Origin: Octopus bimaculoides
Taxonomy: Eukaryota
Reading direction: 5' to 3'
Length of the DNA stretch: 64,000 nt
NCBI RefSeq assembly: GCF_001194135.2
Contig: NC_068983.1
Coordinates: 30,492,732 to 30,556,731 of the forward strand
Part shown: positions 1,457 to 60,247 of the stretch, piece by piece
How positions within the stretch are numbered: the first letter of the stretch is position 1
How the letters are laid out: every line of letters starts with the position of its first letter
The notes under the pieces: generated by a model
Database searches by the model: none
Told to the model about the DNA's origin: nothing
The model's input: only the letters and a program-made list of their open reading frames with translations
Translations under genes and position numbers: made by a program

Positions 1457-4400
1457 GTAAGTATTAGTATTTTCTTTTTACCTGGTTGGATGAAAGGGAA
1501 TGTCGAACTTGGCCGAATTAGAATTCAGTGCGTTGAGAGACAATAGTAAATATCTCAAATCATTTATGTTTATGATTCTATCGATTTTGCAATGCTCCGT
1601 TTTAGATACATTAAAAAAAAATTAGAATCAAATTACGTTTACAACCATTTACGTTGGTCCAGATCATACGACAAGACTCTTGTCCCAAACGTGAGATTAG
1701 TTTACAATTCTGATGGTAAGCCAGGTCGATTTTGTCTTTCTTCCTTGTGAGCTCAATAAATATTATACAAGCATACAAACACTGAGGTTAATATTGTGTG
1801 GCAATTTATTCACCTCCTTTTCAATACTCATAGCCCCCTCTCCAGAGAGGAACACCGATAAATTGCTTTACTTGAAGGCGATACTCCAGTATAGATCATT
1901 CTAATAACTAAAAACACTGAATGTATAAAAGAATAACACCTTTGCCAAAAGAATTTCTTTTTGAGTAAAATCAGTTTGCTGATGGACGTTTAAGCATAAT
2001 TTTCAGGAAATTAGATAAAATGTATTACATCTTGCTTTCAGTCTTGAAAAGAATATCATTAAAATGTTGGTAAACAGTGAATACTTAACCGCACATGAAT
2101 ATCTTCTAATTAGAATGGAATATTTTGCAACCAGTCAAAAGTGTATTTCGACTGATGAAGTTATAACGAAAACAGAAGATGGCATTCTTTCATATATATA
2201 TGACATACGTAATGATTTCTTTCGATAAATTATCGAAGTAATTTGCATAAAAATATGAAAATCGTCATAGAAATTACCACAGAAATGGTTTGGAAAACAC
2301 AGAAATTATCACATTAGAATATAGATTTTGAAACATAATTTCACAAATATTATCATGGAAATTATCATAGAAATGTGAAATTGTCACAGAATTTCTCTCG
2401 CTGATCTCTTTGTGTGAAGTATACAACTGAAAAAAAAAAAAAAAAAAAAATTAGCGCAAGATATTTTGAAATTTTGACTTGGTCTAAATACGAAGATTAA
2501 ATCCTTAATTATACTATTTACTTATTTCCAGTGCCTCATAAATTAAATGACTCATGTTTAACTACATCGCAATGCTCCCTTGCTATTAAAAACAGTGTGT
2601 GTAATAAGTCACAGTGTATCTGCCGAGACAAGCATTTTGAAACAGACAGAGGAAGGCTATGTCACTCTTGTGAGTATCATCATTTCTCATTCAATAAATA
2701 TATTTTACATTATATACGCACATATACTCACCCACATAAATGTATATACGTGTGTGTATATATATATGTGTGTGTGAGTGAGTGAGTGTGTGTGTGTGTG
2801 ACCAAATGGTTACGACTTTCGCGATATCCTGAGTTCGGTCTTGGGCAAATATGATATTTAGCGTAATGATATATATATATATATATATANNNNNNNNNNN
2901 NNNNNNNNNNNNNNNNNNNNNNNNNNNNNNNNNNNNNNNNNNNNNNNNNNNNNNNNNNNNNNNNNNNNNNNNNNNNNNNNNNNNNNNNNNNNNNNNNNNN
3001 NNNNNNNNNNNNNNNNNNNNNNNNNNNNNNNNNNNNNCAGTCAAATCCTGACTCTAAACCACAATAAATGTTCATATAGCACAAGGAGCGAAGACGAAGA
3101 CAAAATAAACCAGCTATTTTTCAGCGTGGCGGTATCTCTTAGATACCCTGTATTATAATTTTAAATAATTATTACCTTTGATGGTTTTTATTCCCATGCT
3201 GGCCACTTGATAAAGTCAATATTTTAAATATCGATCTTATCCTTATTTATATATATATATATATATATATAGATATAGATATATATATATATAATCTTCA
3301 AGCCAGACTCAATGATGTCTGGATCTATGACACTTCCATCATTCGCCACGGCTCCAAATACCATCATAGAGGCAGGATTCTTAGTCTCAAACACAGGGGG
3401 TGCATCGGAAGGGATGTATACAATCACTCAAGAATTTCTGCGATTCACCTCAGGGTCTACAGTGAACTTCTTGTCAACATACACGAGAGTTTTTCCTGCA
3501 ACTTGATGCTTGATGAATGACAGAAGCTTTGAACATCTCTCGGCTCTGATTGTTTTAGCCTTGACTGTGAAGAGGTGACGACGTCGTCAAAAATAACTAG
3601 TCATGCCAAGGTTCCTGTTCACAGTGAATGGGTTGGCTTCAATCGAGCGTTTGAGGCTAGCGACAAACTTTGAATTGCTTGGAATCACTTCGAGTCTTGT
3701 GTTCTTTTCTATCAATCTTTTCCTCTTCTTTAAATGGTTTATACAAATGATAAACTGTTGATTTTGGAAGTTTCGTCGACTTGACAATTTAGCGTGCGCT
3801 AAAACAACAATAGCGGAACGATTCTGTTGTTCCATGACTTTCCGTTGTCGAATTATTTCGCTATTTACCTGAAAAATAAAGAGAAGGATTAGATTTTCAA
3901 GCAGGCAAGGTTTTGTCAAAAAAAGGAAATGTTAAACCCACTAAGTCAACTGTTTAAAATTGGTCTCAGTTTATCTGCAAGACCCTGTACTATGAATATA
4001 AAAAAAACACATACCAGTAACGATACCTCTACGGGTTTGCTAGATATGTTAGAATTACTAACTATGTCTCTTTGGTATTACACCCTATGGTCTGCAGAAA
4101 GCAAAGGGCATACTGAATAATGTAAACCTACCAACATTAGGTTTGAAAAAAATATATATAAATAACGTGGATAGAGTTGTAATACCTTTATTCACAGATC
4201 TACTCTGTCAGAACTGACTTGGGACTAGATATTACCAACACTTACTGATATATATACTTCGATGTAACAAATGGTGTGAGACTTGTTTGAACAGAGAACC
4301 GATACATTGTATTGTATTTATATAAGGGATAAGAATACGTTACAAAAAAGGTGCATGTTACATATAGAAAATTAGTGCTCAGATCGGACTAGATACTGAA

Positions 4401-27800: not shown

Positions 27801-30800
27801 ACAATTTTGCCAGCTCACTGCCTTCTATTATGAAATAATATTAACAAACATTTGTTAGCATTTGTGTAAATCTTATGATTTTGGCCAAAAGAAGAAAGTG
27901 GCAATTGTATCGTAGAAGGGCTACTTTGAATTGAGTCTTCATCGTAGTATTGCGACTAGGTCGTTATCACAGATGCGATTAGTGTAACGAAAATGTTGAC
28001 ACCCACAAAACTAAATGAGAAGTGAATTTAAGGTATGTGTGCGCGCGTGTTGAAATGGCTAAACTGACTCTTTCGGTGTAATTATTTCAGTTGGAAACAC
28101 CGTTCTCAGATCCAGTCAATTACAAGTCCTTAAAAAGAAAAAAAAGAAAAGTAGTCGAAGAAAAATTGAAAAGTAGCATTAGTTTAATTTATGCACATTT
28201 ATGATTTATGAGAAATCGTTATTTCCGAGATCAGAAAATATTTAAAGTTTCTTCTATTAAAAGACGAAGCCATCTTCCAATAAAATTTGAATAGTTATAA
28301 AACCATACTTTCCTCTATATTACAATAGGCAACATCGGTTTCAGTTCGATATGTAGTCGTCTTGACCGTTGTCGTTTTTACTCCTTTAACCGATTATTCT
28401 TAATCATTTATCTATATGCTGGTTCTCAAATTGTTCTCTTGGTAAATAACAGTGAATGGATCTCCATCGGCTGAGATGATAAATAGTGCAGTTGTTTGAT
28501 CAACCGAATTGTTTATTCATTAAATTATGTAGTGTGACTATATATTAAGACACTTATTTGAACTCTTTAAGTAATCCTCCAGCAGAATCAGCGTGACAGT
28601 GTGAAACAATGCTAACCCTTTGAATTACATGTACAGCATATCAGACAGGCTTTTATAAAGTTTCGGTCTATCTTATTTTAGTCACTAGGCTTGGGTCAAC
28701 CCGAAGCCAAGGTAAAAAAAATACTTGCCCAAGGTGCTCTGCGCAGAGATTCTCTCATCTCTTTTCTGGCAAGTACGGTGAAGTTTATGCCACGTCGAAA
28801 TGTGACTGGAGCTGTCTACGATACTTGCCGAAATGATTAAAATATTAGTCAATTGATTAGTGTTATATTTTGCTCCCCGCATAATTATTTCTAACTAGAT
28901 TTTTGGTACTCCCAACATTAAATGTAATAGGGATAAATAATAATAGTAACATCCTTGCATAGTTACTATGATGTCGAGACATAACATCGCTCACTATTCC
29001 TTAAAATAACAAATGCATTTACTCTTTTACTCTTTTACTTGTTTCAGTCATTTTACTGTAGCCATGCTGGAGCACCGCCTTTTAGTCGAGCTAATCGACC
29101 CCAGGACTTATTCTTTGTAAGCCTAGTACTTATTCTAACCGCTAAGTTACAGGATCGTAAACACACCANNNNNNNNNNNNNNNNNNNNNNNNNNNNNNNN
29201 NNNNNNNNNNNNNNNNNNNNNNNNNNNNNNNNNNNNNNNNNNNNNNNNNNNNNNNNNNNNNNNNNNNNNNNNNNNNNNNNNNNNNNNNNNNNNNNNNNNN
29301 NNNNNNNNNNNNNNNNNNNNNNNNNNNNNNNNNNNNNNNNNNNNNNNNNNNNNNNNNNNNNNNNNNNNNNNNNNNNNNNNNNNNNNNNNNNNNNNNNNNN
29401 NNNNNNNNNNNNNNNNNNNTATACATACACGACGGGCTTCTTTCTGTTTCCGTCTTCCAAATCCACTCACAAGGCTTTGGTCGGCCCGAGGCTATAGTAG
29501 AAGACACTTGCCCAAGGTACCACGCAGTGGGACTGAACCCAGAACCATGTGGTTGGTAAGCAAGCTACTTATCTGAAAAGAATAATATTAGTTGATTATT
29601 CTTAACACTTCGACCTAATGGATAGCGACAAAATAAATACCAGACTGAAATATATTCTGAAGTAGATATGACTGACTGAAATTCTTGAATACAGTGCCCC
29701 AGCATGGCCCTAATTTAATACCTGAATCCAGTAAAAGAGTAAAAGAATGACAAAGATCAGAGAATATTTCACTCAATAGTAGTCAAGAACAATTTTCTTT
29801 GTAAATCTTGTTTTCTGCGAAATGATTTGATATTTAGCCATTTCCTGTTCTACGTATGAAAATATATGCTAATTAGTTTTTCGTCTGTTGGAAGGTATCA
29901 ATTAAAATAGGAACTTTTATGCTGTTTGACAGTATGAATTTCTACAGAGAAAATATGTTTAACATGCTGGCGCCTTTCATAATGGTCCGTTAAGATAATG
30001 CATTCTCATTGCTATTCTAACAATTGAAGAACTGAGTAAAGGTAGTACTATTTCACTTATTTTCGGTTTCAGCGCAGAAAGCAATGACTAACACTAGCAA
30101 AATTGTTAAGGATTTCCTTTCATTTCAGTTAAGAGACTTGATACCAATCGTATTAACGAATCCTTAATTCTAGCCTTGAAGAAGTCTAAGATTTAGCGAT
30201 TCCGAAAAATGGAATAAATAGAAAAACAAAAATTGTCTTGGTTGTATACATAAGATAACTTTATTTATTTATTGTTACCGAGGTGGGAGTGTATAACATA
30301 TGAAACTAACTGACGAAGGATCGATTGTACTAGACATAGATAAAATATTTTGTCAGTAAGTGTGACTATATATTAAGACATCGATGTATTTCTCTGGACT
30401 TACCACTCTAATAGCTTATAAGTAAATTGTTAACTGAAGCTTTTTTCTTTTTTTTTTATGGTTTAGTCAGAAATGTAAGTCACCTCAAGGTCCAGTCCTT
30501 GTTGTGGCGTAATGGCTTGTATATCTCAATGACTCTGAGTGCCATGCCAGCAGAACACAAGCTCCAGATCCGATTGCCATTAAATACGAATGTCGGTTTA
30601 TTTCACAAGACATGAAAACCACGTGTGTTAGGAAGAAAAAAACTGTGTAGCCTCCTCCTACAAATGAACTTAAGGTTTAGTGCCTCATCAATGTACAATA
30701 TGCTATAAATCAGACTGAGGTGCGTTAAATAAATTCTAAAATTCCAGTCCAATGCGATACTGTCAGCTTTGCTTCCTAATTCCTAATCTTTTGCCTATTT

Positions 30801-34562: not shown

Positions 34563-34763
34563 CTATATAACGAGCTTCTTTCANNNNNNNNNNCTTTCAG
34601 TCATTTGACTGTGGCCATGCTGGAGCACCGCCTTTAGTCGAGCAAATCGACCCCAGGACTTATTCTTTATAAGCCAAGTACTTATTCTATCGGTCTCTTT
34701 TGCCGAACCGCTAGTTACAGGGACGTAAACACACCATCATCGGTTGTCAAGCGATGTTGGGGG

Positions 34764-37800: not shown

Positions 37801-40800
37801 ATAGAGTCGGACATCAAGGTGATAGGTATCATTCGAAGAGACTACAAAGTAGTGGAAGGAGCAAAATATTAGTGATCGTGCGACTCGGCACCTGGAGAGG
37901 CACGTAAATGCTATCCAACAGCATCGAGGTGCAGAGGAGCACTGGACTGACATACTGGTCAAATTATTCAGTTTGGTTTGGTCCGGATGTCCAAGTGGAG
38001 AACTGGGACGAGGGAACGAGTGTCAGCGTAGCCAAGTTCACTCAGAAAAGAGAAAGCTCTCTAAAATCCCGGGCATACATGGCGAATACTTACATGACCA
38101 ACACCATATATTACCGCCATGCCGTCAAGCCTTGCTTCAGTTCCCGTCCACCACTTTCTATGGAAGAGATTCATTCTACTGGTCAGGCGTTCTATTTGTT
38201 GTCAGCAGCAAGTGAGAAGAGGACTGGGCATATTGTGGCTGATAATGCACAGGCGTGAGCTGAGATTGCACCATCAAGGAGACGCTACATCTCTAGTGTT
38301 TCTTTGACGGTGAGCAGGGCATCTGACACCTAGTCTTGTTTGGGGTTGACAGCTCTCAGCCAGTTGGGCCGTGAGATTGATAAAAGTTGTACTGTGGCGG
38401 TCTATAGAGGGTAAGTAGCGGGAAAAAATGATGCTGTTCTTAAAAAGGCACTGGGCGTCGACAGGAGTCATGGTGTGTTACAAAGAACTTTTGGGACAAA
38501 GCCTATAAAAAGGATTTCCAAAAATCCCTGGCTTGGCAGTACTAACGGAGCATCGCCGGTTCGGGATAATTTACAGGTATGGAAGTGCCATCAGCTGGAC
38601 CTGCCCGAAATGCACGCAGTGGTGAAATCGTCCTACACGCATTCGTTCAGTTTTCGTGTATTGCTATCTAGTGGAGGTATGTTGAAGGATCCGGCTATCA
38701 GCTGAGTCCATTGAGAAGATCGTTCCGCCGCCTTCCTTGCTCCAAAATTTGAAACATTTTATATTATTAGAGCTGCGAAGGCGACGAGCTGGTAGAATCG
38801 TTAGCATGCCAGGCAAAATGTTTAGCGGTATTTCGTCCGTCTTTGCGTTCAGAGTTCAAATTCGGCTGAGGTCAACTTTGCCTTTCATCCTTTCGAATTG
38901 ATGAAATAAGTACCATTCGGGCGATTCGAGCTGTCTAGAGGGGCTAGTGGGGCACTACGTCATGTGTCTGGGATTTTCGAAATATAAAGGATAAAATTCG
39001 AAACTAATAATTAAGAGACATTTTATTCCTATATTTAATAAAAAGCAATAAACATTTTGTTCCAACATTTACATTTTTTACTCTTTGCAAAACATATTTA
39101 GAATTATATCTGTGAGAGCCACGAAATTCAGATTAAACAGCTCAACGTCAACCGTACGGTCATCCTTGGTTGGGTATCCGGATATTCTTGGAGTGCTTTT
39201 TCATGTTGCCTTACTTTTTTTCTTCCTCTCTGTTTATTGTATATACACACCCTAAAATGTTTGCTTACCACCATTTTATATAACAGTTTAGTCTGTGTGT
39301 GTGTGAGGTTTCTGTGGCCAATAATGAACGGATTATTTTTATTATTTATAAAATAGTATAAGATTACAGTAAGAATTACGTAAAAGAAGACATGATAGTT
39401 TGTGTATTTCTACGCATGACATAAATATTCAGCCTCGGGTGAAAATACCAAACGTGTGTCTCGTGTTTTTACAATAAGACTCTTGTCTAAATCCTTCAAT
39501 AACGTTTCTCGTATCTACGGAGAGTTTCAACAGATTTAGGTGCGAAAACGTAGAGAGATGAAAATAGAAGAGCACTTCATTATTTTCAGCTTGCGCTGAT
39601 GACCCTGGGACAGACAAAAGTAGTGTTGAGAAAAATAGCCGCAAGTAGGTGAGAGGTAATGTCCTTATCACGAAAAGGAAGACGGCGAGCTGACAGAATC
39701 ATTAGCACGCCGAGTGAATGCTTAACAGTATTTCGTCCGTCTTTAAGTTTTGAGTTCGAATTCCACCGAGGTGGACTTTGCTCTCCATCTTTCAGGGCCA
39801 ATGAAATAAGTAGCAGTTGAGCACTGGGATCGATGTAATCGACTATTTCGTTCCCCCAAAATTTCGGGCCTTGTGCCTATAAAAGAAAGGATTATCACAA
39901 GGAGGACAATTGGTTGAGTGCTAGATAAACTTTACAGTATATAGTTACATTCTTTTCGGTTTAAGTTCAAATCTCACCGAGATTGACTTAGTCTTTCATC
40001 CTTCCAAGGCCGATAAAACAAATATCAGAGAAGTACTGGAGATTGCACCTCTTTCATTTTGTAATTATTTTTCTTCAGCCCTCGGACTCGTAAGGCCAGT
40101 TACTCGGTTTCCATGGCATGTAAGTGACCGAACGGGAGGACGGTCCGTTGCAGAGTTCAAGGCCAACACTTTGGAGGGAAGGAGACAAATCGATTATATC
40201 GACCCCAGTACTTTTCTATTCAGCTATCACCCCTTCCTTTCTCATTCATAAACACAAGAGTATTATTATAGGAGATTATCTCGGTAGCCATGGGATCTAT
40301 GAAAATACAAAACCCAGAAACACCATCGGATCATTCTACACATCTGTGTAATTTTTCGCGCAATTCCACCCAGCCGTTTGACCGTGAATTCCAAGAAAAG
40401 AAAGAATCGCCCATGTCAAATTTATATGTATCAATTTCCAATATATACCTAATATTTCTTCACAGAAGAAAAGAAACTCTTGATGCATAACAATAACATG
40501 CTTTTTTCATATATAAAACGATTCCCCCTCCCGGAAAATGATGTCTTCATTACTAATTATTTTCATGTAATTTATTTCAGGACAAATGGTAAAGTAGGCA
40601 GAAGCGAACTCCGTATTGGTACTTCTTATCAGAATTCNNNNNNNNNNNNNNNNNNNNNNNNNNNNNNNNNNNNNNNNNNNNNNNNNNNNNNNNNNNNNNN
40701 NNNNNNNNNNNNNNNNNNNNNACCTCATTGTGTGTGATATTAGCTTGATATTTCCGGCTGAGGAGATTCTGATCTTGCGCTGCTAGGAAAATCCTTCTGT

Positions 40801-43466
40801 TTCGGCTTTCAAACCAACACTCTGCAGCCACTGAAGGGTTCTTCTTATATCTACATCAGCTTCCCCAGCTCGTTCGGGGTATTGCCCATGCAATGGTTTT
40901 CCTTGCCTCAGACTTGATATTTTACACTTTTTTGCTGCTTCAGTGGGTGGTGCATTCTCCTTATTTATTATCATTATTATTAAATCTGATTTCAAATTCC
41001 GCCGAGGTCGAGTTTGCCTTTCATCCTTTCGGGGTCGATAAATTAAGTAACAATGAAGCACTGGGGTCGATGTAATCGACTACCCCCACTCCCTCAAATA
41101 TCAGGCTTTGTGCCCATAGTAGGAAGGGTTATTATTAAGGCGGCGAGCTAGCACGAGTATTAACACGACGGGGGTCGATGAAATAAGCATCAGTTGAGCA
41201 CTGGGATCGATTAAATCAACGAGCTCCCTTCTCTTGTAAGTGCCAGAATTTCAGACCATTATTATTAAGATGGTGAGCTGGCAGAATTGTTAGCACGCCG
41301 GACAAAAAGCTTAGCGGCATTTCGACCGTCTTTATGTCCTGAGTCCAAATTCCGTCGCGGTTGACTTTGCTTTTTATCCTCTTTGGATCAATGAAATAAG
41401 TACCAGTTGACACTGGAGGTCGATGTAATCGACCTATCCTCCCCCAAAATTGCTGGCCCTAGGCCAAAATTTGAAGCCATTATTATTATTATTATTATTA
41501 TTATAGTGGCGGAACCGTAAAGCGGTGGCCGCTAATTTCCACACCCTAAAGCAATCATCGATTTCGAAGAAATATTATTATAGGCTTGTCGTGAACGGAG
41601 AGAATTCTATCTGAACGTTTTTAGAAATGGCCTACTGATACATACTGATCACCTACTCTCAACAAATGTCTGTTAAATTTGTGGTCTATTCTTTATACCC
41701 TTTCGACTAAGTCACAAACAACTATATCGATCACAATAACTACAATACAATTCAATTTACTGGCCATGGTTAATGAGAATTAGCCTAACTGGTGCTGGTA
41801 TGTGTATGTGTCTACACCAGTGTGTCTGTGTGTCTATACCTGCGTGTGTGTCTATACCCGCGTGTCTGTGTCTACACCTGTGTGTCTGTGTCTACACCTG
41901 TGTGTATATTCTCGTGTGTCTACACCAGTGTGTGTGCTCGCGTGTGTCTACACCAGTGAGTGTGCATGCGTATCTCTACACTAGTGTGTGTGTCTACACC
42001 AATGCGTGAATGTACGTGCGTGTCTACACCAATGCGTGTGTGTGTGTGCGTGCGTGCGTGCGTGTGTCTACACCAATGCGTGTGTCTACAACAAAGCGTG
42101 TGTGTCTACATCAATGTGTGTGTGTGCATGCGTCTATACCTGTGTGCGTGTGTGTCTACACTTGTGTACGTGCGTGTCTACACTTATGTGAGTGTGTACG
42201 TGCATGCGTATGCCTACACTTGTGTGTGTGTGTGTGTGTGCGTGTGTCTACACCAATGCGTGTGTGTGTGTGTGTGCGTGCGTGTGTGCGTGCGTGTGTC
42301 TACACCTGTATGTGTGTGTCTACACCTGTATGTGTGTGTCTACACCTGTCTGTGTGTGTCTACACCTGTCTCTGTGTGTGCGTGCGTGTGTCTACACCTG
42401 TGTACGTGCGTGTCTACACTTATGTGAGTGTGTACGTGCATGCGTATGCCTACACTTGTGTGTGTGTGTGTGTATGTCTACACCAATGTGTGTGTGTCTA
42501 CACCAGTGTGTGTGTGTGTGTGTGTGTTTATCTGCGCGCGCGCGTAAACTATGAGCTTCATGTTTTCGAGTGTTTAAATGATTAAACAAATATAGCAGTT
42601 GGATATTATGTAAACATTTGAAAATACATCGAGATGTTATTAGTTAACAGAACATCGATATTTGATTGGTTGGAATGTAAACCGTTTGAAAATGCGTCTC
42701 ATTTTCATTTATTCATTGTCATGTACAAACATACATAATACTTTAAATTATTCAGTATTATGCGCACCCCCCCCCCTTTTTTTTTTTGCTTCTTCAGTAC
42801 TGTGTACAACCTCTCCACCCACATATGAGCAAAGATATATTAATAAATAAAACAATCAACTCTTGTTAATGAAGATTTTGTATCAATGAATTTAGAAATG
42901 TTTTCGAGATATGGAAACAATTAAAATGTTCCTTGTTAGAAGATATGCCGGATATGCGCTCACTGACGTTATCTTGTTTGCTGAAGGATGGTTGGAATTT
43001 ATAGTAATGAACAAGAATTCCTACTATCCTCAGGCATTTAACTACACTCATATCCGACATAACCTCTGCCGATAAATCTTTTAATCGTGCAGCTCATTAA
43101 TGCAACGGCACATTAAAAGACAGTGGCTCACAAAATAGAACACATTACATAAAAAACAACATTAATATTCATTAACACAAAATTGGCAAAGATGAAATGG
43201 TTCAGTCATCCTTAAAGTTGAAATGTTCTTTCTAATTTTGCTAAAATTTTCGTACAGCTATATCTTACCTTAACATTATGTACGAAAATTGTCTCTACTT
43301 TCACTACTTCTATATCCTGTATGACCGTTTCCAACACAAGTACACAAAGCCTCCTTCTGCTACATGCTTCTAACAACCCTAATATCTCCCCATTCAGTAG
43401 TACATCTCTTTCAAAGGCGTTTATCGGTCCAAGTTTTTTTTGCTTACGGATTACAGTGAAATAAAG

Positions 43467-46397: not shown

Positions 46398-46682
46398 AGA
46401 GTGTTAGGTGTGATGTACAGAATTAAATATTGAAAAGAAAAGTCGTCAGAATTTTGGAATAACTTCTTTCATTTATTTTACACATATATTAGCGCTTTCG
46501 TTCGTCTTTCGAACTTGTCAAATATAATTCTGTGAAAATACAGAGATCTTGCTTATTTATATAAGACAGGTGTTTTTTTTGTTTTGTTTATAACANNNNN
46601 NNNNNNNNNNNNNNNNNNNNNNNNNNNNNNNNNNNNNNNNNNNNNNNNNNNNNNNNNNNNNNNNNNNNNNNNNNNNNNNNNN

Positions 46683-49709: not shown

Positions 49710-52437
49710 TATTAACACAAATCATACATACCTAACTTGATAATATAAACCAGGTCATGGATAATTTAGTACCGGCTTGCAGAGAAAAATTACTTTTTAA
49801 TGTTATTTTTATTTTATGGACTACCGCAGTCTGCAAGGTGTTTTTGTATTATATATGTAGTACGTGTCCTTGTGGTTATGGGTGTTGCACTCACGATCAT
49901 GAGATCGTGGTTTCAATTCTCAGACCGGCTGCGTGTTGAGTTCTTGAGTAAGCCGCTTCATTTCATGTTGCTCCAGTGCACGCGGCTGTAAATGGATAAC
50001 CTTGCGACGGACTAGCTTTCCGATCAGGAGTTGGCATCATTCAAAAGATAGAACGATGCAAAGTGCATTGTGACCAACGATGTGTAACAGCATCCTATAG
50101 TCTGGTCTTGTTTTTTTTTTTGTTATGCGCGTTTTGCTCCGGTCTGTGGAAAAATAGTCTGGTATGAAACCGGTATGTGGTGCAGAACAGATCTGGGGAT
50201 GCTAACATCCACTACACTTCCAAATCATACCCCTTCCTCCTACATTGCAATCTGATAAACTTCACCTGCGATTCCGTTTGGTCATTAAATATACTTCTAT
50301 CTCACATACACAGTCACAAACACATAAAAAACCTACATACACACATTCAAATACACCCATACACAAATCAATACACCCATCACAGGCCTCTGCATACAAT
50401 TATACACACACACACACATACACACGCGCGCATAAAGCCTACACAGACTTATTCCCACAAATACATATACAAAGCGCCTACACGCGCACATGCGTCCAGC
50501 ATAAACACACACACACATACACACAATATATGGTGTATAGTAACCAAAATGAAAGCCTTTTACAATATTCAATATGCACAAACTATCCAGTGCAGACCAA
50601 ACAGACCGTAAGCATTCGATTTGACGCTTCTGGTGTTAGTTTCAAGTCATTCTTACTTAGTCTACTGTAACAGAAAAAAACAACCTCAGAGATTATTACA
50701 AACAGATATATTCACTCTATGGAGGCGCAATGGCCCAGTGGCTAGGGCAGCGGACTTGCGGTCGGAGGATCGCGGTTTTGATTCCCAGACCGGGCGTTGT
50801 GTGTGTTTATTGAGCGAAAACACCTAAAGCTCCACGAGGCTCCGGCAGGGGATGGTGGCGACCCTTGTACTCTTCTACCACAACTTTCTCTCACTCTTAC
50901 TTCCTGTTTCTTGAGTAAAACGCTGCGATGAACTGGCGTCCCGTCCAACTAGGGGTAGGGGGAACACGTACGCCATCAAAACCGAGAAATCGGCACAAGG
51001 GGCTAAGAGGATTTCCATTCCATTCCATATTCACTCTACTCAACACTTACATTTAGAACTCATTTGAGCAACAATTACATAAACACGTGTGTACGTGTAT
51101 GTATATATGCATATTATGTGCGTAATAAAGTAAAACGAAATACCAATATTTTGTATGCATTTAATAGACGTGTTTCAGGTAATTATGCAAGAGACAAACT
51201 CTTTCTCAGTTTAAACGTTTCAGTATATGTGTGCGTATGTACATATTTTGGTATTATTTGGATAATGAATGTCGGCCGTGTATTGAAGTCGGTTCAATTA
51301 CATCACGAATGACGCATTTTTGCCATCTAAACAACGCACAATACTGTTAAAATAACATTTATTTTCTGAATTTTCATCGCATATCAGCAACCTGGTCACA
51401 TGCACTGTAAACTATGCACAATAGTTTTTATAGAATAATTCAAAATTTTTGAAGTAAGTTATACCTAAAAATTTAGCATTGTTGCGTGTAATGTAAACAA
51501 GTGTAAAGACTTGTTTACACTTGTTTATCTTAGATATTGCTTGGCTGAAGCTGTAGGTATAAATTATGAGGATGATCACACACGTACGTATATTTAATTT
51601 ACATGCGTACATACCTGTATGTATGTATGTATGTATGTATACTCTTTTACTTGTTTCAGTCATTTGACTGTGGCCATGCTGGAGCAGCGCCCTTTGTTGA
51701 GCAAATCGACCCCAGGACTTATTCTTTGTAAGCCTAATACATATTCTATCGGTCACTTTTGCCGAACCGCTAAGTTACGGGGACGTAAACACACCAGCAT
51801 CGGTTGTCAAGCGATGTTGGGGGACAAACACAGACACACAAACATATACACACACATACATATATATATATATANNNNNNNNNNNNNNNNNNNNNNNNNN
51901 NNNNNNNNNNNNNNNNNNNNNNNNNNNNNNNNNNNNNNNNNNNNNNNNNNNNNNNNNNNNNNNNNNNNNNNNNNNNNNNNNNNNNNNNNNNNNNNNNNNN
52001 NNNNNNNNNNNNNNNNNNNNNNNNNNNNNNNNNNNNNNNNNNNNNNNNNNNNNNNNNNNNNNNNNNNNNNNNNNNNNNNNNNNNNNNNNNNNNNNNNNNN
52101 NNNNNNNNNNNNNNNNNNNNNNNNNNNNNNNNNNNNNNNNNNNNNNNNNNNNNNNNNNNNNNNNNNNNNNNNNNNNNNNNNNNNNNNNNNNNNNNNNNNN
52201 NNNNNNNNNNNNNNNNNNNNNNNNNNNNNNNNNNNNNNNNNNNNNNNNNNNNNNNNNNNNNNNNNNNNNNNNNNNNNNNNNNNNNNNNNNNNNNNNNNNN
52301 NNNNNNNNNNNNNNNNNNNNNNNNNNNNNNNNNNNNNNNNNNNNNNNNNNNNNNNNNNNNNNNNNNNNNNNNNNNNNNNNNNNNNNNNNNNNNNNNNNNN
52401 NNNNNNNNNNNNNNNNNNNNNNNNNNNNNNNNNNNNN

Positions 52438-52661: not shown

Positions 52662-53980
52662 TACCGGCATAATGCCTCTCCCAAGGTTTAATTGTATGTA
52701 TATATATATACATATATATATATACTGAGAGAGATACATGTACAAAGACACTTATGTATCTTGCATACAATACACAGACACGTACGCGCATTCTTGCACG
52801 CACGCATATTTTTTGCATATGGTCATATACTCGTCAATTTCACCGCTCTTACGAAAGTGTTTCCAACAATTAGGAATATAAAGTATTTTATGAATTCAGG
52901 AATGGTGCTTGGATACTTTAGCATTCTGTTCTTAAGTTAATCAAAACAACTCCAGCTGGTAAAGTAAGACTGTCTGCTTGTTTAGGTATTTGATTAGTTC
53001 GTGTTTGTTTCTATTATATTTCTTTGTATCTTCTTCGAATTATATTTTCAGTGAGAAAAGAACCACCCTCCTTACGAGAGTCGTAAGTACCTCTTATATT
53101 ACGTTGTTGTTGTTAGAGATTGTGTTGTTGATGAGTTCTGTCTGTCTTTCATTCATTCTTTCTTTATTTGTCTGTCTGTCTGTCTCTGTCTTTGGACTGC
53201 TGCCAAACTTTGGATTTAAGTCCCCATAATTTAGCGGTTCGTGAAAGAGACCGATAGAATGAGTACCAAATCCTTAAAAAAATAAGTCCTGGGGTCGATT
53301 CGTTCGACTAAAACACTTCAATTTCGTGCCCCAGCATGACTGCAGTCTCATGATTGAAACAAAAGGTAAAAGATGTGTGTGCATATATANNNNNNNNNNN
53401 NNNNNNNNNNNNNNNNNNNNNNNNNNNNNNNNNNNNNNNNNNNNNNNNNNNNNNNNNNNNNNNNNNNNNNNNNNNNNNNNNNNNNNNNNNNNNNNNNNNN
53501 NNNNNNNNNNNNNNNNNNNNNNNNNNNNNNNNNNNNNNNNNNNNNNNNNNNNNNNNNNNNNNNNNNNNNNNNNNNNNNNNNNNNNNNNNNNNNNNNNNNN
53601 NNNNNNNNNNNNNNNNNNNNNNNNNNNNNNNNNNNNNNNNNNNNNNNNNNNNNNNNNNNNNNNNNNNNNNNNNNNNNNNNNNNNNNNNNNNNNNNNNNNN
53701 NNNNNNNNNNNNNNNNNNNNNNNNNNNNNNNNNNNNNNNNNNNNNNNNNNNNNNNNNNNNNNNNNNNNNNNNNNNNNNNNNNNNNNNNNNNNNNNNNNNN
53801 NNNNNNNNNNNNNNNNNNNNNNNNNNNNNNNNNNNNNNNNNNNNNNNNNNNNNNNNNNNNNNNNNNNNNNNNNNNNNNNNNNNNNNNNNNNNNNNNNNNN
53901 NNNNNNNNNNNNNNNNNNNNNNNNNNNNNNNNNNNNNNNNNNNNNNNNNNTATTTGCTTTTTTTCATTTTAAATTTGCTC

Positions 53981-55074: not shown

Positions 55075-55529
55075 GTAAGTAGTCGATAGTTTATATAGAG
55101 TGTAAAGTTTGAATGACAAACGCTGGTATTGGTATAGTACAAGCAATTTTACACATACGCACACACACTCACATAAATGCAAGAGCAAAATAAAACAGTT
55201 AAACTCTTCGTTATGATATCATAAATTACGTAATGCTTACACGTATTTTATTTACAAACACTAGTACGTTATGCGGTAATTGTTACGTAAGTGATTGCAT
55301 AATCACCTTGAAATGCCAGCTCTTTAGAAGTAAATTCTTTATTATAATCATAAGATCGTACATAGAATTGGACATAACAGGACAGACAATTACAAAAAGG
55401 TTATGTGAGTTCGAGTGATTCTTTTAAAAAGTTAATTATGAACAAACGAATGATTTATGGATAAAAGCATAAATTGCTTACTTTTGTTTTTAAATGACAA
55501 ATTGTCTTACTTTTGCCTTTACACAAGAA

Positions 55530-58345
55530 CTGTTTTGTTATTATTATTAAATAGATGGTAGAATACATTACATGGTAATAAAAGTAGCAGGTTTACCAAN
55601 NNNNNNNNNNNNNNNNNNNNNNNNNNNNNNNNNNNNNNNNNNNNNNNNNNNNNNNNNNNNNNNNNNNNNNNNNNNNNNNNNNNNNNNNNNNNNNNNNNNN
55701 NNNNNNNNNNNNNNNNNNNNNNNNNNNNNNNNNNNNNNNNNNNNNNNNNNNNNNNNNNNNNNNNNNNNNNNNNNNNNNNNNNNNNNNNNNNNNNNNNNNN
55801 NNNNNNNNNNNNNNNNNNNNNNNNNNNNNNNNNNNNNNNNNNNNNNNNNNNNNNNNNNNNNNNNNNNNNNNNNNNNNNNNNNNNNNNNNNNNNNNNNNNN
55901 NNNNNNNNNNNNNNNNNNNNNNNNNNNNNNNNNNNNNNNNNNNNNNNNNNNNNNNNNNNNNNNNNNNNNNNNNNNNNNNNNNNNNNNNNNNNNNNNNNNN
56001 NNNNNNNNNNNNNNNNNNNNNNNNNNNNNNNNNNNNNNNNNNNNNNNNNNNNNNNNNNNNNNNNNNNNNNNNNNNNNNNNNNNNNNNNNNNNNNNNNNNN
56101 NNNNNNNNNNNNNNNNNNNNNNNNNNNNNNNNNNNNNNNNNNNNNNNNNNNNNNNNNNNNNNNNNNNNNNNNNNNNNNNNNNNNNNNNNNNNNNNNNNNN
56201 NNNNNNNNNNNNNNNNNNNNNNNNNNNNNNNNNNNNNNNNNNNNNNNNNNNNNNNNNNNNNNNNNNNNNNNNNNNNNNNNNNNNNNNNNNNNNNNNNNNN
56301 NNNNNNNNNNNNNNNNNNNNNNNNNNNNNNNNNNNNNNNNNNNNNNNNNNNNNNNNNNNNNNNNNNNNNNNNNNNNNNNNNNNNNNNNNNNNNNNNNNNN
56401 NNNNNNNNNNNNNNNNNNNNNNNNNNNNNNNNNNNNNNNNNNNNNNNNNNNNNNNNNNNNNNNNNNNNNNNNNNNNNNNNNNNNNNNNNNNNNNNNNNNN
56501 NNNNNNNNNNNNNNNNNNNNNNNNNNNNNNNNNNNNNNNNNNNNNNNNNNNNNNNNNNNNNNNNNNNNNNNNNNNNNNNNNNNNNNNNNNNNNNNNAAGC
56601 AGAAAAGGAGTCGTTCCAACTTTCTTAGCCACAAATCGGGGCAAGGCACAACGGACAGGCGATAGGTGATTACAGATGCTATGAACACCTGCACCACCTC
56701 CGCTCTGCCCTTCAAGGACAGTCGCCTCCCGGACCACTTCCGGCTTATGGCTTCCACCTTGTTCACTACCTCACTCCAATTCTTCTCTGTCTGGGAGTCT
56801 GGACCAAACCAAACTCCGAGCAACTTAACAGGACCATCCGTCCAGTTTCCAACTACACTGGACGATATCGGCTTGTTCCTCCAGGTGCTTAGGCGCAAAC
56901 CGATGGACTTGTCCTTGTTAACTTTTGCCCCTGCCACCACTTCGTATCTTCTGAGAGCATCTTCTACACAAGGTAGCTGTGCTTCGTTGGACACGATGAG
57001 GGTGACGTCATCCGCATAAGCAGAAACAGACTTACCGCATCCGATTTCATTTGGGTTGCCGCCTAATCTCTCCAACTTCCGCAGCAATGGCTCAAGAGAT
57101 AAAACGTATAGAAGCGTGGACAAGGGACACCCTTGACGAACTGAACGCTTGATCGAAAACGGCTCTGTTAGGTAACCGTTTATCTGGACCGTGGACTTGA
57201 TGTCGCTATACATAACGGAGATCCACCCACGAAAGCCAGGGCCTAGCCCAGCCGCTTCGAGGACAGCCCCCAGGTAACGATGGTCAACCCTATCGAACGC
57301 TTTACTTTGGTCTAAATGGACTAATGCCCCTCCTTTGCCGGTTAATTTTCCAACCCTATCTAAGGTGTAGCGGAGAAGGTGAAGATTATCCTGGATCGAC
57401 CTGCCTGGGATTGCACATGTCTGTGCCTTCCCGACAAGTTTCTCCACGACCACCTTCAACCTCCTCACTAACACCTTTGCCAGAATCTTTAACTCTACAT
57501 TAAGTAGAGTTATGGGCCTATAATTACCGATGTTATCCCCCATGTTTGGATCTTTCTGAATCAGTGTCACAACTCCCCGACTCACAGAACTGGGAATCCT
57601 CTCGTTCTGCTGCCAGTTTGCATAGACACTAGCCAGTATATCTCCAAACAGTTTCGGCATGCAACGATAAAACTCATAGGGCAGACCATCTAGTCCCGGT
57701 GACTTTTCCCCGGCACACTCTGCCAACACCTCTCTTACCTCCGCGGGAGTGATCAGTCCTTCACAGCATCCAGCCTCGCGCGCCGAGAGTCGCGGTCCAC
57801 CGTTTAGGAAGTCCTTTAAGGTTTCTCCCCGCTCAAGCGGACTACCCTCCCCGAACAACCGAGCGAAATGCTGGTGAAAGACTTTCTGCATCTCCTCCTG
57901 CCCATAGATCTTGCGTCCCTGTTCGTCGGTTAAAGACTTAATACAGGACTTCTTGCCCTTCTGACACTCCTCATGACGTGCCCATCCGGCAACATTAATA
58001 CCTTCACGTTTCCCTGCACGTAGCTTAGCTCTAACTCTGCACCCTTCATGCTTGGCGTAGAGGTGACGGTGCAAGACCATCCTCGCTGCCAACACTCTAG
58101 ACGCAGAGCCAGATTCCATTGCCTCGTCTAATTTTTTAACTAATTCGCCCTCTATCCTAGTCTTATCTGAACTTAGCTGATTGCTAAATCTAATGGACTC
58201 CGAATGGATGGCTCTTTTGAGAGCGTGCCACCACACGGATCACAAACTTGTGACGTGTGAGGTACACGTAGATAAATGTCATAGACAGGGACCCGGGTTT
58301 TGGAAGATGAACAAGTCTCTTTTGAATTGTGAAGCTCTTTAGAAG
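55530..58345 (-). mobile_element. Young Tx1/L1-clade LINE, 5'-truncated, with inverted 5' segment; ORF2 linker + reverse transcriptase
   Basis: Stop-free frame 58236-56597 with KSPGLDGLPYEFY, NYRPITLLN, LDQSKAFDRVDH, VRQGCPLS, YADD. Probable (AAT)n tail near 55540. Gap 55600-56596. Endonuclease-end motifs on the opposite strand at 58235-58342. Confidence 0.93.
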
Positions 58346-58724
58346 TAGACAGTAATTCAATTCATTGTAGATACAGTTAAATGGCCGTCATCATCGTTCT
58401 GACGTTCACTTTTCCTTGCTTGCATGTGTAAGACTTGACATTATTGAACTGATTAACCAGTAGAATGTGGCTCATGCCGATATGGCAACATGGTAAGCCA
58501 AACAAAACTGAGCCAATAGGAAAAATATGTGATAGAGTAATGAGCTAATCAAGTGTTGTAAAGTCACGGTGTTACAATGTAGTTGATACTAAGTAGTATG
58601 CAGTTATTAAAAAAAAACTTTTAAAAAGCCCTGAGAAACGTGTTGTAACATAGTAGACCCGATTGATTATCGTTATGAAAGAAACCTATACCTAAATTTG
58701 AGACAAAATAGCTGTCTATTCGGT

Positions 58725-59339
58725 GGTTTATCATCATAATAAAACTGATGCTGTTCATTTTTAGTCAACTGAGTCAAAATTAGAGTTTTATCTCTCGAAG
58801 CAGTGACAGTACTGTCTTGATTGACTGGGTTCGTAAAAATTTCTGTAACCCATCCACCATGCTCCATAAAGGTTCCACGTAAAGTTATTTTCATAAGGAT
58901 TCTTGACGATTAGAGAAACAATCTTGATCTCTACCAAATGGCTAACAACAAAAAGAATGCGAATGGATCAAGCATCATGGTTTAGGATCTTGACAAGAAG
59001 GGTGTTGATGAGCTTTGTCCAGAAGTAATGGCAGAAAATACGAAATCGTCACACGTTTCTTATGTATTTCGTTTGGCCTGCTGACGGTCAAACTTTGGTG
59101 GTTATACAGATTATATTGTCTGTCTGGCATAAGTCTACTACCGCTCGATTAACATTTTAAAATCAACCTTCAGGGTGTGTGTAAAAATATGTTATCTAAT
59201 GGCAAAGGCAAATATGCTATATTTGGAATCAATGTCCTTGATATCGTGGAACTTTCGAACAATCCCTGCTGTTCTTGATAAAACATATTTCTGGATTAAT
59301 GCAACTCGCGTAGTTCTACTGATCTCGATAAAAAAAAAA
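58725..59339 (+). pseudogene. RACK1: RACK1 (GNB2L1) processed pseudogene: inverted N-terminal piece (58745-58894, -) joined to C-terminal piece (about 58925-59150, +), 3' UTR and poly(A)
   Basis: Minus: TLRGTFMEHGGWVTEIFTNP..D...ASRDKTLILTQLTKNE, about 24/44 identical to recalled human RACK1. Plus: GSSIMV*DLDKKGVDELCPEV...WPADGQTL..GYTD with stops and frameshifts. A10 at 59330-59339. Degenerate TSD at 58705-58724 and 59336-59356. Confidence 0.88.
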
Positions 59340-59501
59340 CTACCATGTCTATTGGTAACGGTATCTAGGGCACCTATAACTACTAGAAATGGATTCAAAT
59401 TGTGGCATAAGGCCGGTGATTAGTCGACTGGTACTAACCTTTATAGACCCAAAAAATATGAAAAGCAAATTTAGCCTCACTGAGATTTGAATTCGAGATG
59501 A

Positions 59502-59555
<54 letters not shown>

Positions 59556-59559
59556 AAAT

Positions 59560-60247
59560 AATAATAATAATGATAATAATCCTTTCTACTATAGGCACAA
59601 GGCCTGGGTTTTTGTGGGTAGAGGGACACGCATTCGCATCGACCTCAGTATTTGACTGGTACTTAATTTATCGACCCCGAAAGGATGAAAGCAAAGTCGA
59701 CCTCGGCGGAATTTGAACTCAGAACATAGCGACGGACGAAATACCGCTAAGCATTTCGTCCGGCGTGCTAACAATGATGATAATGATAATCCTTTCTACT
59801 ATAGGCACAATGCCTCAAATGTGGAGAAAGGGATTAAGTCGATTACATCCACCCCAGTGCGTAACTGGTACTTATTTCATCGAACCCGAAAGGATGAATG
59901 ACAAAGCTGACCTCAGCGGAACCTGAACGCAGAAAGTAGCGTCGGGCAAAATACCGCTAAGTATTTCGTCCAGCGTGTTAACGATTATGCCAGCTCACCG
60001 CCTTAATAATAATAATAATAATCCTTTCTGTTATAGGCACAAGGCCTGAAATTTTTGTGAGGTGGGGTGGGTGGGCTAGTCGATGACATTAAGTACCAAT
60101 ACTCAACTGGTACTTAATTTATCGACACCGAAAGGATGAAAGACAAAGTCGACCTCGGCGGAATTTGAACTCAGCAAGTAGTGGCAGACGAAATACCGCT
60201 AAGCATTTCGCCCGGTGTGCTAATGATCCTGCCAGCTCGCCGCCTTG
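59560..60247 (-). mobile_element. Head-to-tail array of three tRNA-derived SINEs (Nin/Deu-like core gtcgactttgcctttcatcctttcggggtcgataa)
   Basis: Three units of about 220 bp, joined through (ATT)n tails; the middle and right units start aaggcggcgagctggcag. Further copies at about 8080, 11540, 13200, 15400, 25800, 27615, 32270, 38775, 39675, 62090 and 62660. Confidence 0.85.

What the first reader, a model, noticed from the sequence alone, without database searches (positions are those of the whole stretch)
58705..59356. RACK1 processed pseudogene with inverted 5' end, poly(A) and TSD
Seen: the RACK1 N-terminus (TLRGT..HGGWVT..ASRDKT) is on - at 58745-58894. It abuts the decayed C-terminus (GSSI.*DL..VDEL..WPADGQTL..GYTD) on +, followed by a UTR and A10. 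Flanks aaaatagctgtctattcggt and aaaactaccatgtctattggt look like an old ~20-bp TSD starting with AAAA. Positions that carry introns in vertebrate RACK1 (ASR/DK, IW/DL, DGQ/TL, from memory) are contiguous here. Roughly 600 nt of middle CDS is absent. Inference: an mRNA retrocopy made with 5' inversion, i.e. twin priming in trans on a host mRNA.
Basis: partly seen in the sequence, partly recalled or inferred. Interest (0 to 1): 0.8.

Follow-up and report, generated by a model that had tools for sequence, protein, structure and literature searches.

The report
Old RACK1 retrocopy with inverted front end

Summary
Two RACK1-derived pieces abut head to head.

- **Inverted 5' piece:** window 58688-58957, minus strand. 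It copies the mRNA from a likely TOP-type transcription start to nt 293 (codon 72).
- **Direct 3' piece:** window 58958-59172, plus strand. It copies nt 831 (codon 252) through the stop codon plus about 20 nt of 3' UTR.
- **Match to parent:** BLAST E-values against Octopus bimaculoides RACK1 mRNA are 1e-42 and 9e-38.
- **Retrocopy evidence:** parental introns 1 (1189 bp) and 6 (707 bp) are precisely absent.
- **One event, one parent:** both pieces carry octopus-lineage states, and their divergence is equal within error (JC 0.25 and 0.21).
- **Geometry:** the cap end of the inverted piece joins nt 831 of the direct piece. This is the twin-priming layout, with 537 nt of mRNA lost.

- **Left TSD:** the proposed copy (58705-58724) lies inside RACK1 coding sequence (mRNA about 257-276), so it cannot be a TSD.
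- **No replacement TSD:** no significant TSD exists at the corrected boundaries.
- **Poly(A):** the A10 run (59330-59339) sits 157 nt past the last detectable RACK1 homology, whereas the modern 3' UTR is only 64 nt.

Five-prime-inverted processed pseudogenes are routine in humans (13-21%). This is a new, decayed instance in a cephalopod, not a new mechanism.

The parts
58688..58957 (-). Inverted 5' segment of the RACK1 retrocopy. Contents: 15 nt matching the genomic pyrimidine tract CTCTTCCTGTTGGCA (putative TOP transcription start), the 5' UTR (with 8- and 22-nt deletions), ATG at 58894-58892, and codons 1-72 (mRNA nt 1-293 of L009). The exon1/exon2 junction lies at 58792/58791 with no intron. 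Disablements: a 6-nt deletion after the ATG and a 2-nt frameshift at mRNA 261-262.
   Evidence: 78.8% identity over 269 aligned nt, JC 0.249+-0.035; the leftmost 39 nt map collinearly to the mRNA.
58958..59172 (+). Direct 3' segment of the RACK1 retrocopy: mRNA nt 831-~1053, i.e. codon 252 to the stop codon plus the first 18-21 nt of the 3' UTR. The exon6/exon7 junction lies at 58986/58987 with no intron. Disablements: W260 TGG->TAG at 58983-58985, several frameshifting indels, and the former stop TGA->TTA at 59149-59151.
   Evidence: 81.8% identity over 209 aligned nt, JC 0.208+-0.035; the 3' UTR start matches octopus, not decapod.
58957..58958 (.). Internal junction. The cap-proximal end of the inverted segment is joined directly to mRNA nt 831 of the direct segment. 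No recognisable filler or microhomology.
   Evidence: genomic upstream sequence of L008/L007 versus the window minus strand; start of the direct segment.
59173..59329 (+). 157 nt of unassigned sequence between the last recognisable RACK1 3' UTR base and the A-run. It is not similar to the remainder of the modern UTR, to downstream genomic DNA of the parent gene, or to anything else in the window or in L007/L008.
   Evidence: alignment scores at the level of shuffles; only a self-hit in BLAST.
59330..59339 (+). A10 run, a possible remnant of the poly(A) tail. An ATTAAT hexamer lies about 30 nt upstream. The link to the retrocopy is unproven.
   Evidence: sequence; 9 A>=10 runs in 61 kb, so P is about 0.025 for one within 170 nt.
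58705..58724 (.). It is rejected because it is the reverse complement of RACK1 mRNA ~257-276 (codons SLKGHNYF).
58606..58619 (+). Alternative, admissible but non-significant TSD candidate: ATTAAAAAAAAACT, preceded by TT, matching ATAAAAAAAAAACT at 59328-59341. If real, the insertion would span 58620-59329 and leave 68 nt unassigned at its left end.
   Evidence: repeat family D5; empirical p about 0.06.

Best explanation
This is an old processed pseudogene (retrocopy) of the single octopod RACK1 gene. It consists of two cDNA segments of one spliced mRNA in opposite orientation.

The most likely origin is one LINE-mediated target-primed reverse transcription event with a second, internal priming ('twin priming'):
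- One cDNA was primed from the 3' end of the RNA and stopped at nt 831.
- A second cDNA was primed on the other DNA strand near nt 293 and ran to the capped 5' end of the mRNA.
- The two cDNA ends were ligated (window 58957/58958), and 537 nt of the RNA (294-830) were never copied.
- The copy then decayed neutrally to JC about 0.21-0.25 (stop codon, frameshifts, UTR deletions).

Shown: mRNA origin, intron loss, extent and orientation of both pieces, equal divergence, octopod lineage, and the junction at the putative transcription start.

Inferred: the twin-priming mechanism, the identity of the reverse transcriptase (an L1/Tx1-like LINE is a candidate), and the A10 run as the poly(A) remnant.
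For: - Both pieces are RACK1, with E=1e-42 and 9e-38 against O. bimaculoides mRNA. Protein level: 1.2e-21 and 5.6e-12.
- Exon-exon junctions 187/188 and 859/860 are contiguous in the window: 25/30 and 22/29 identity to the exon side, against 10/30 and 9/29 to the intron side. The parental introns are 1189 and 707 bp.
- The inverted piece continues 15 nt beyond the longest transcript contig. It matches genomic CTCTTCCTGTTGGCA at 10/15, all five differences being T in the window (four C->T, one G->T). It ends exactly where that C+pyrimidine tract begins, and the direct piece starts at the next base.
- The geometry is that of twin priming. The outer end of the inverted piece is its 3'-most mRNA coordinate (293). 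The inner junction joins the 5'-most ends of both pieces.
- Divergence is equal within error, JC 0.249+-0.035 versus 0.208+-0.035. Octopus-specific versus decapod states are 15:3 and 28:3.
- Only one RACK1 gene is annotated in O. vulgaris. P0239 is an N-truncated isoform of P0241.
- No other RACK1 fragment occurs in the 64 kb.
- Human precedent: 21% of somatic and 13% of polymorphic processed pseudogenes carry such an inversion (PMC3996531; PMC12016303). 54% of inverted L1 insertions have cDNA ends more than 20 bp apart, and cDNA lengths of about 250-750 bp are typical.
- Octopus genomes carry L1-Tx1 LINEs (PMC13282606). An L1-ORF2p-like RT ORF lies 450 bp away.
Against: - No TSD can be shown. 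The best admissible candidate is low-complexity with p about 0.06.
- The A10 run is 157 nt past the last RACK1 homology, and the modern 3' UTR is only 64 nt.
- The left boundary (~58688) is defined only by loss of similarity.
- Microhomology at the priming site cannot be assessed after ~22% decay.
- The 537-nt gap is larger than in about half of human cases.
- The neighbouring LINE has an intact ORF, so it is far younger than the retrocopy and cannot be the actual source.
Confidence: 0.65

Rival explanations
1. A conventional, collinear RACK1 retrocopy was inserted first. A later DNA-level inversion of its 5' part, plus a ~540-bp deletion, produced the present layout.
For: The copy is old (JC 0.21-0.25), so there was ample time for rearrangement. 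The outer boundaries and TSD are unresolved, so an inversion breakpoint at the left edge cannot be excluded. The region is repeat-rich, with a LINE, SINE-like units and microsatellites.
Against: One inversion breakpoint would have to fall exactly at the 5' end of the retrocopy. The putative transcription start abuts nt 831 with no flanking DNA carried along. A separate 537-bp deletion at the same junction would also be needed. Twin priming yields both in one step and is frequent for processed pseudogenes.
Confidence: 0.15
2. The structure is a multi-template chimera made by RT template switching. Reverse transcription started on another polyadenylated RNA (the unassigned 157 nt plus A10), jumped to RACK1 mRNA inside its 3' UTR, and stopped at nt 831. 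The inverted piece was still added by second-strand priming or end joining.
For: RACK1 homology stops ~43 nt before the modern poly(A) site. It is followed by 157 nt of unrelated sequence ending in A10. Template-switch chimeras are known products of L1-type RTs (own knowledge; Buzdin et al. 2002-2003, not read here).
Against: The 157 nt match nothing in the window or in 57 kb of other Octopus DNA, so it is not a common SINE or LINE 3' end. A longer ancestral 3' UTR, or a later insertion or deletion, explains it equally well. Template switching alone does not produce the inversion.
Confidence: 0.1
3. Two independent RACK1 retrocopies landed next to each other in opposite orientation.
For: RACK1 is a highly expressed TOP mRNA, the class that gives many retrocopies (own knowledge).
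Against: A 5'-only fragment (start..293) with no 3' end or poly(A) is not what TPRT produces. No T-run lies left of 58688 on the plus strand. The pieces abut with a 0-nt gap exactly at the mRNA start. They have the same divergence, and they do not overlap in mRNA coordinates.
Confidence: 0.04
4. The pieces are fragments of a DNA-level (segmental) duplicate of the RACK1 gene, or the similarity is due to chance.
For: None beyond the similarity itself.
Against: Both introns covered by the pieces are precisely absent. The E-values are 1e-42 and 9e-38. No parental intron or flank similarity was found.
Confidence: 0.01

Closest known systems
5'-inverted processed pseudogenes made by human LINE-1 (twin priming; Ostertag & Kazazian 2001, Genome Res 11:2059; Cooke et al. 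2014, PMC3996531)
   Same: An intron-less mRNA copy in two non-overlapping segments of opposite orientation. The inner junction joins the 5'-most ends of the two cDNAs. Segment lengths (270 and 215+ bp) fall in the human range. Exon order is shuffled without duplication.
   Different: The host is an octopod, and the responsible LINE is unknown. The TSD, the poly(A) at the expected site and the priming microhomology cannot be demonstrated because the copy is ~22% diverged. The inverted cDNA reaches the very 5' end of the mRNA. The internal gap is 537 nt.
Ordinary processed pseudogenes of ribosomal-protein and other TOP mRNAs
   Same: The source is a highly expressed TOP-type mRNA of the translation apparatus. 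The 5' UTR is included from the pyrimidine-tract start, and the copy is disabled by a stop codon and frameshifts.
   Different: It is not collinear: the 5' part is inverted and the middle 537 nt are missing.
Template-switch chimeric retrocopies (U6-L1 and mRNA-L1 chimeras)
   Same: They could account for the unrelated 157 nt between the RACK1 3' UTR stub and the A-run.
   Different: Such chimeras join RNAs in the same orientation, whereas the two RACK1 pieces here are in opposite orientation.

Membership tests
Processed pseudogene / LINE-mediated retrocopy | Parental introns precisely absent | tested here: met
   Both parental introns that fall inside the copied parts are absent: intron 1 (1189 bp) at 58792/58791 and intron 6 (707 bp) at 58986/58987.
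Processed pseudogene / LINE-mediated retrocopy | Copy corresponds to the transcript (UTRs included, starts at the transcription start) | tested here: met
   The 5' UTR is present. It extends 15 nt past the longest transcript contig into the genomic C+pyrimidine tract CTCTTCCTGTTGGCA. That this tract is the transcription start is an inference from the TOP motif.
Processed pseudogene / LINE-mediated retrocopy | Poly(A) tail at the mRNA 3' end | tested here: inconclusive
   Only ~20 nt of 3' UTR are recognisable. The A10 run lies 157 nt further on. The modern UTR is 64 nt.
Processed pseudogene / LINE-mediated retrocopy | Target-site duplication flanking the insert | tested here: not met
No significant direct repeat exists at the corrected boundaries. 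The best candidate is A-rich, with empirical p of 0.06. Decay may have erased it.
Processed pseudogene / LINE-mediated retrocopy | Located away from the parent gene and non-functional | tested here: met
   No other RACK1 exon occurs in the 64 kb, whereas the parent gene spans ~8.3 kb. The copy carries a TAG at W260 and several frameshifts.
Twin-priming 5' inversion | Two non-overlapping segments of one RNA in opposite orientation, with the 3' segment in the poly(A) orientation | tested here: met
   nt (-15)..293 lie on the minus strand and nt 831..~1053 on the plus strand. The A-run is on the plus side.
Twin-priming 5' inversion | The inner junction joins the 5'-most ends of both cDNAs, and the outer end of the inverted segment is its 3'-most coordinate | tested here: met
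   The transcription-start end (58957) abuts nt 831 (58958). Nt 293 lies at the outer edge, 58688.
Twin-priming 5' inversion | Both segments have the same age and the same parent | tested here: met
   JC 0.249+-0.035 versus 0.208+-0.035. Octopus versus decapod states are 15:3 and 28:3. A single annotated parent gene.
Twin-priming 5' inversion | A single TSD encloses the whole structure, with microhomology at the internal priming site | tested here: inconclusive
   The boundaries are defined only by loss of similarity. There is no significant TSD. Microhomology cannot be read after ~22% divergence.
Twin-priming 5' inversion | An L1-type (APE endonuclease, poly(A)-using) LINE was active in the lineage at the time | not testable with these tools
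   L1-Tx1 families exist in O. vulgaris (PMC13282606). A neighbouring RT ORF is closest to human L1 ORF2p among solved structures (E=2e-35). Activity ~55-70 My ago and trans-mobilisation of mRNAs were not tested.
Template-switch chimeric retrocopy | Two different RNAs fused in the same orientation, sharing one poly(A) and one TSD | tested here: not met
   The two RACK1 pieces are in opposite orientation. The origin of the 157-nt 3' stretch is unknown.

The most novel reading that the evidence does not exclude
An octopod LINE reverse transcriptase (plausibly of the L1/Tx1 clade) mobilised a host TOP mRNA in trans ~55-70 My ago and made a twin-priming 5' inversion. If so, both trans-retrocopying of mRNAs and twin priming are properties of invertebrate LINEs, not peculiarities of mammalian L1. 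A genome-wide census of inverted retrocopies in cephalopods could then measure this.
Probability: 0.5. Interest if true: 0.4.

Novelty: new member of a known kind. Interest (0 to 1): 0.3.

Why it matters
The find shows that cephalopod genomes hold mRNA retrocopies with the same 5'-inversion architecture that marks LINE-1 activity in mammals. This points to a LINE in the octopod lineage that can copy host mRNAs in trans and be primed from both DNA strands. On its own, the find is a single decayed pseudogene with no sign of function. Its value is as a lead for a genome-wide screen, not as a discovery. It is also a caution: a TSD-like match read by eye next to an A-run turned out to be part of the inserted sequence.

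Tried and rejected
- **Protein search with the pseudogene's own translation:** found nothing because it shares too few exact words. A 92-aa query returned only short fragments. The parent was reached only after the Octopus RACK1 sequence was rebuilt from PDB alignments.
- **Two paralogues:** two protein clusters with consecutive O. vulgaris accessions suggested them. This was rejected, because P0239 is an N-truncated isoform identical to P0241 from M72 on.
- **Extending the inverted piece left of 58688 into mRNA 294-450:** alignment scores equal those of shuffles.
- **Aligning 59173-59336 to the rest of the 3' UTR and to 260 nt downstream of the stop in O. bimaculoides and O. vulgaris:** z about 0.
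- **The missing middle hidden beyond the neighbouring LINE:** no RACK1 hit anywhere else in the window by blastn or tblastn. Assembly gaps at 51.9-56.6 kb could hide sequence.
- **A chimera between the LINE at 55.5-58.2 kb and the inverted RACK1 piece:** rejected. About 450 nt of non-coding, non-LINE-like sequence separate them, and the LINE ORF is intact, hence much younger.
- **TSD search at the corrected boundaries:** nothing significant.
- **Rfam and tRNA scans of 57.5-60.5 kb:** nothing.
- **Exact-ORF look-up of the 73-aa pseudogene ORF, to find the source assembly or orthologous contigs:** not on record.
- **Literature:** no paper in the library links twin priming with cephalopods or molluscs.

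Full report
**What is in the sequence.** The minus strand read from 58894 downward translates to MKITLRGTFMEHGGWVTEIFTNPVNQDSTVTASRDKTLILTQLTKNEQHQFYYDDK. The plus strand from about 58958 gives GSSIMV*DLDKKGVDEL..., then WPADGQTL and GGYTDYIV in shifted frames. Both hit RACK1 chains of the PDB. The best hit is 9eho_hh, at E=1.2e-21 for residues 5-58 and E=5.6e-12 for residues 252-305.

**Finding the parent.**
- The pseudogene's own translation was too decayed for the word-indexed protein search.
- I rebuilt the 9eho_hh sequence from PDB alignments and searched with it.
- The closest clusters contain Octopus vulgaris/sinensis, O. bimaculoides, Argonauta and Sepia RACK1.
- This gave four sequences:
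  - an O. bimaculoides mRNA contig (L009, 1103 nt);
  - the O. bimaculoides gene (L008, CM046621.1);
  - the O. vulgaris gene (L007, OX597834.1);
  - an O. vulgaris-type mRNA (L001).
- The L009 protein is identical to 9eho_hh over the 316 residues recovered from it.
- The second O. vulgaris protein, P0239, is only an N-truncated isoform of P0241. I therefore see one parent gene, not two paralogues.

**Extent of the two pieces.**
- BLAST against L009 gives window 58888-58688 = nt 91-293 (78.3%, E=1e-42) and window 58958-59169 = nt 831-1050 (76.2%, E=9e-38).
- Pairwise alignment extends the minus-strand piece through the 5' UTR to L009 nt 1 at 58942.
- It then continues 15 nt further (58943-58957). 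There the window reads TTCTTTTTGTTGTTA against genomic CTCTTCCTGTTGGCA just upstream of the transcript contigs, in both Octopus genomes.
- That tract is a C followed by pyrimidines, the signature of a TOP-mRNA start. This is an inference, since no cap-mapping data were available.
- The next base, 58958, is already nt 831 of the direct piece.
In full: 58688-58957.
- The direct piece is 58958-~59172: codon 252 through the former stop (TGA->TTA at 59149-59151) plus 18-21 nt of 3' UTR.
- The intervening 537 nt of mRNA (294-830) are nowhere in the window.

**Retrocopy, not gene fragment.** The O. bimaculoides gene has seven exons. Both are contiguous in the window.
- Across 188-217 the window matches exon 2 at 25/30 and intron 1 at 10/30.
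- Across 831-859 it matches exon 6 at 22/29 and intron 6 at 9/29.
- The missing introns are 1189 and 707 bp.
- The copy is dead. It has a 6-nt deletion after the ATG, a 2-nt frameshift at nt 261-262, TGG->TAG at W260 (58983-58985), several further indels, and 8- and 22-nt deletions in the 5' UTR.

**One event, one parent, how old.**
- JC distance to O. bimaculoides is 0.249+-0.035 for the inverted piece and 0.208+-0.035 for the direct piece. These are indistinguishable.
- At sites where Octopus and decapod RACK1 mRNAs differ, the window carries the octopus state 15:3 in the 5' coding part and 28:3 in the 3' part.
- The start of the 3' UTR matches octopus, not decapod.
- One published calibration sets JC 0.09 at about 25 My and JC 0.2 at about 56 My (PMC13282606). 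On that scale the copy is roughly 55-70 My old.
- That is older than the O. vulgaris/O. bimaculoides split (13-33 My, same paper). The estimate is crude, because the distance also includes change in the parent.

**What fails.**
  - The 39 nt 58688-58726 have their best hit on the whole 1.1-kb mRNA exactly at the collinear position, nt 266-293 (22/28). Only 12 of 5000 shuffles reach that score anywhere.
  - The shared 8-mer TGTCTATT has an empirical p of about 0.024 at random places in the window with the same geometry. It was also picked post hoc.
- At the corrected boundaries I find no significant direct repeat.
- The best admissible candidate is ATTAAAAAAAAACT (58606-58619, preceded by TT) against ATAAAAAAAAAACT (59328-59341). 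It is low-complexity, with empirical p about 0.06. It would also leave 68 nt unassigned at the left end.
- On the right, RACK1 similarity stops at ~59172.
  - The remaining 43 nt of the modern 64-nt UTR, and 260 nt of downstream genomic DNA from both Octopus species, do not align to 59173-59336 better than shuffles.
  - The A10 run (59330-59339) has about a 2.5% chance of occurring within 170 nt. It is modest evidence for a poly(A) remnant, no more.

**Mechanism.**
- The internal geometry is what twin priming predicts. The inverted segment has its 3'-most mRNA coordinate (293) at the outer edge. Its 5'-most coordinate (the start) sits at the inner junction, joined to the 5'-most coordinate (831) of the poly(A)-oriented segment.
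- A later DNA inversion would need one breakpoint exactly at the 5' end of the retrocopy plus a coincident 537-bp deletion.
- Two independent insertions would need a 5'-only cDNA without a 3' end, landing with a 0-nt gap at the mRNA start.
- In humans, 21% of somatic and 13% of polymorphic processed pseudogenes show this inversion.
- More than half of inverted L1 insertions have cDNA ends more than 20 bp apart. Typical cDNA lengths are 250-750 bp. The 537-nt gap and the 270/215-bp pieces are therefore unremarkable.
- I put twin priming at about 0.65. The outer hallmarks (TSD, tail, priming microhomology) cannot be read in a copy this old, so the mechanism rests on the internal geometry alone.

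**Surroundings.**
- About 450 bp to the left, on the minus strand, lies a 5'-truncated LINE. Its ORF (55519-58236) is open and is interrupted only by a 997-N assembly gap.
- It has a Pfam RVT_1 domain (E=3e-29). Among solved structures its best match is human L1 ORF2p (E=2e-35, against 5e-21 for R2).
- Its intact ORF makes it much younger than the retrocopy, so it is a neighbour, not the source. It does show that L1-like RTs live in this genome, in line with the L1-Tx1 families reported for O. vulgaris.
- To the right are a (TAC)n microsatellite and two SINE-like units.

**Novelty.** I found no paper in the library linking twin priming with cephalopods or molluscs, and none on octopus retrocopies. 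The phenomenon itself is textbook for mammalian L1. I therefore file this as a new member of a known kind, of modest interest. It is a lead for a genome-wide screen, and the claimed TSD is refuted.

Noticed in passing
window 55519-58236 (- strand): A 5'-truncated LINE with a long open ORF (905 codons including a 997-N assembly gap). It has an RVT_1 domain, and its best solved-structure match is human L1 ORF2p (E=2e-35). No endonuclease domain lies upstream. Its intact ORF implies a recent insertion.
   Followed up: partly
window 59559-59900 and 59390-59500: Two tandem SINE-like units about 210 bp apart (...AATCCTTTCTACTATAGGCACAAGGCCT... / ...GACTGGTACTTAATTTATCGACCCCGAAAGGATGAA...). The same element also occurs in introns of the Octopus RACK1 gene (L008 ~12393, L007 ~12465 and 28875). 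A partial third unit lies at 59390-59500.
   Followed up: partly
window 59504-59555: A perfect (TAC)n microsatellite of about 17 units, followed by (ATA/ATG)n, directly upstream of the SINE-like unit.
   Followed up: no
window 2890-3037, 29169-29419, 34584-34593, 40638-40721, 46596-46682, 51875-52437, 53390-53950, 55600-56596: Eight runs of N (assembly gaps, 10-997 bp). Three lie within 7 kb left of the finding, so sequence there is unknown.
   Followed up: no
window 41960-42585: A long imperfect (TG/CA)-rich low-complexity tract that yields spurious 'CVCVCV' ORFs in several frames.
   Followed up: no
L008 9908-9922 and L007 equivalent: The Octopus RACK1 promoter region carries a C+pyrimidine tract (CTCTTCCTG) just upstream of the transcript contigs, consistent with a TOP-mRNA start. 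The old retrocopy is indirect evidence that transcription started there.
   Followed up: partly
PDB 9eho chain hh versus L009: The RACK1 chain of PDB entry 9eho is identical to O. bimaculoides RACK1 over the 316 residues recovered from the PDB alignment. That ribosome structure is therefore evidently from an octopus.
   Followed up: no
proteins P0239 / P0241 (O. vulgaris CAI9738230.1 / CAI9738229.1): The 90%-identity clustering puts two products of the same O. vulgaris RACK1 gene into different clusters. This mimics a pair of paralogues, but the 246-aa protein is just an N-truncated isoform.
   Followed up: yes
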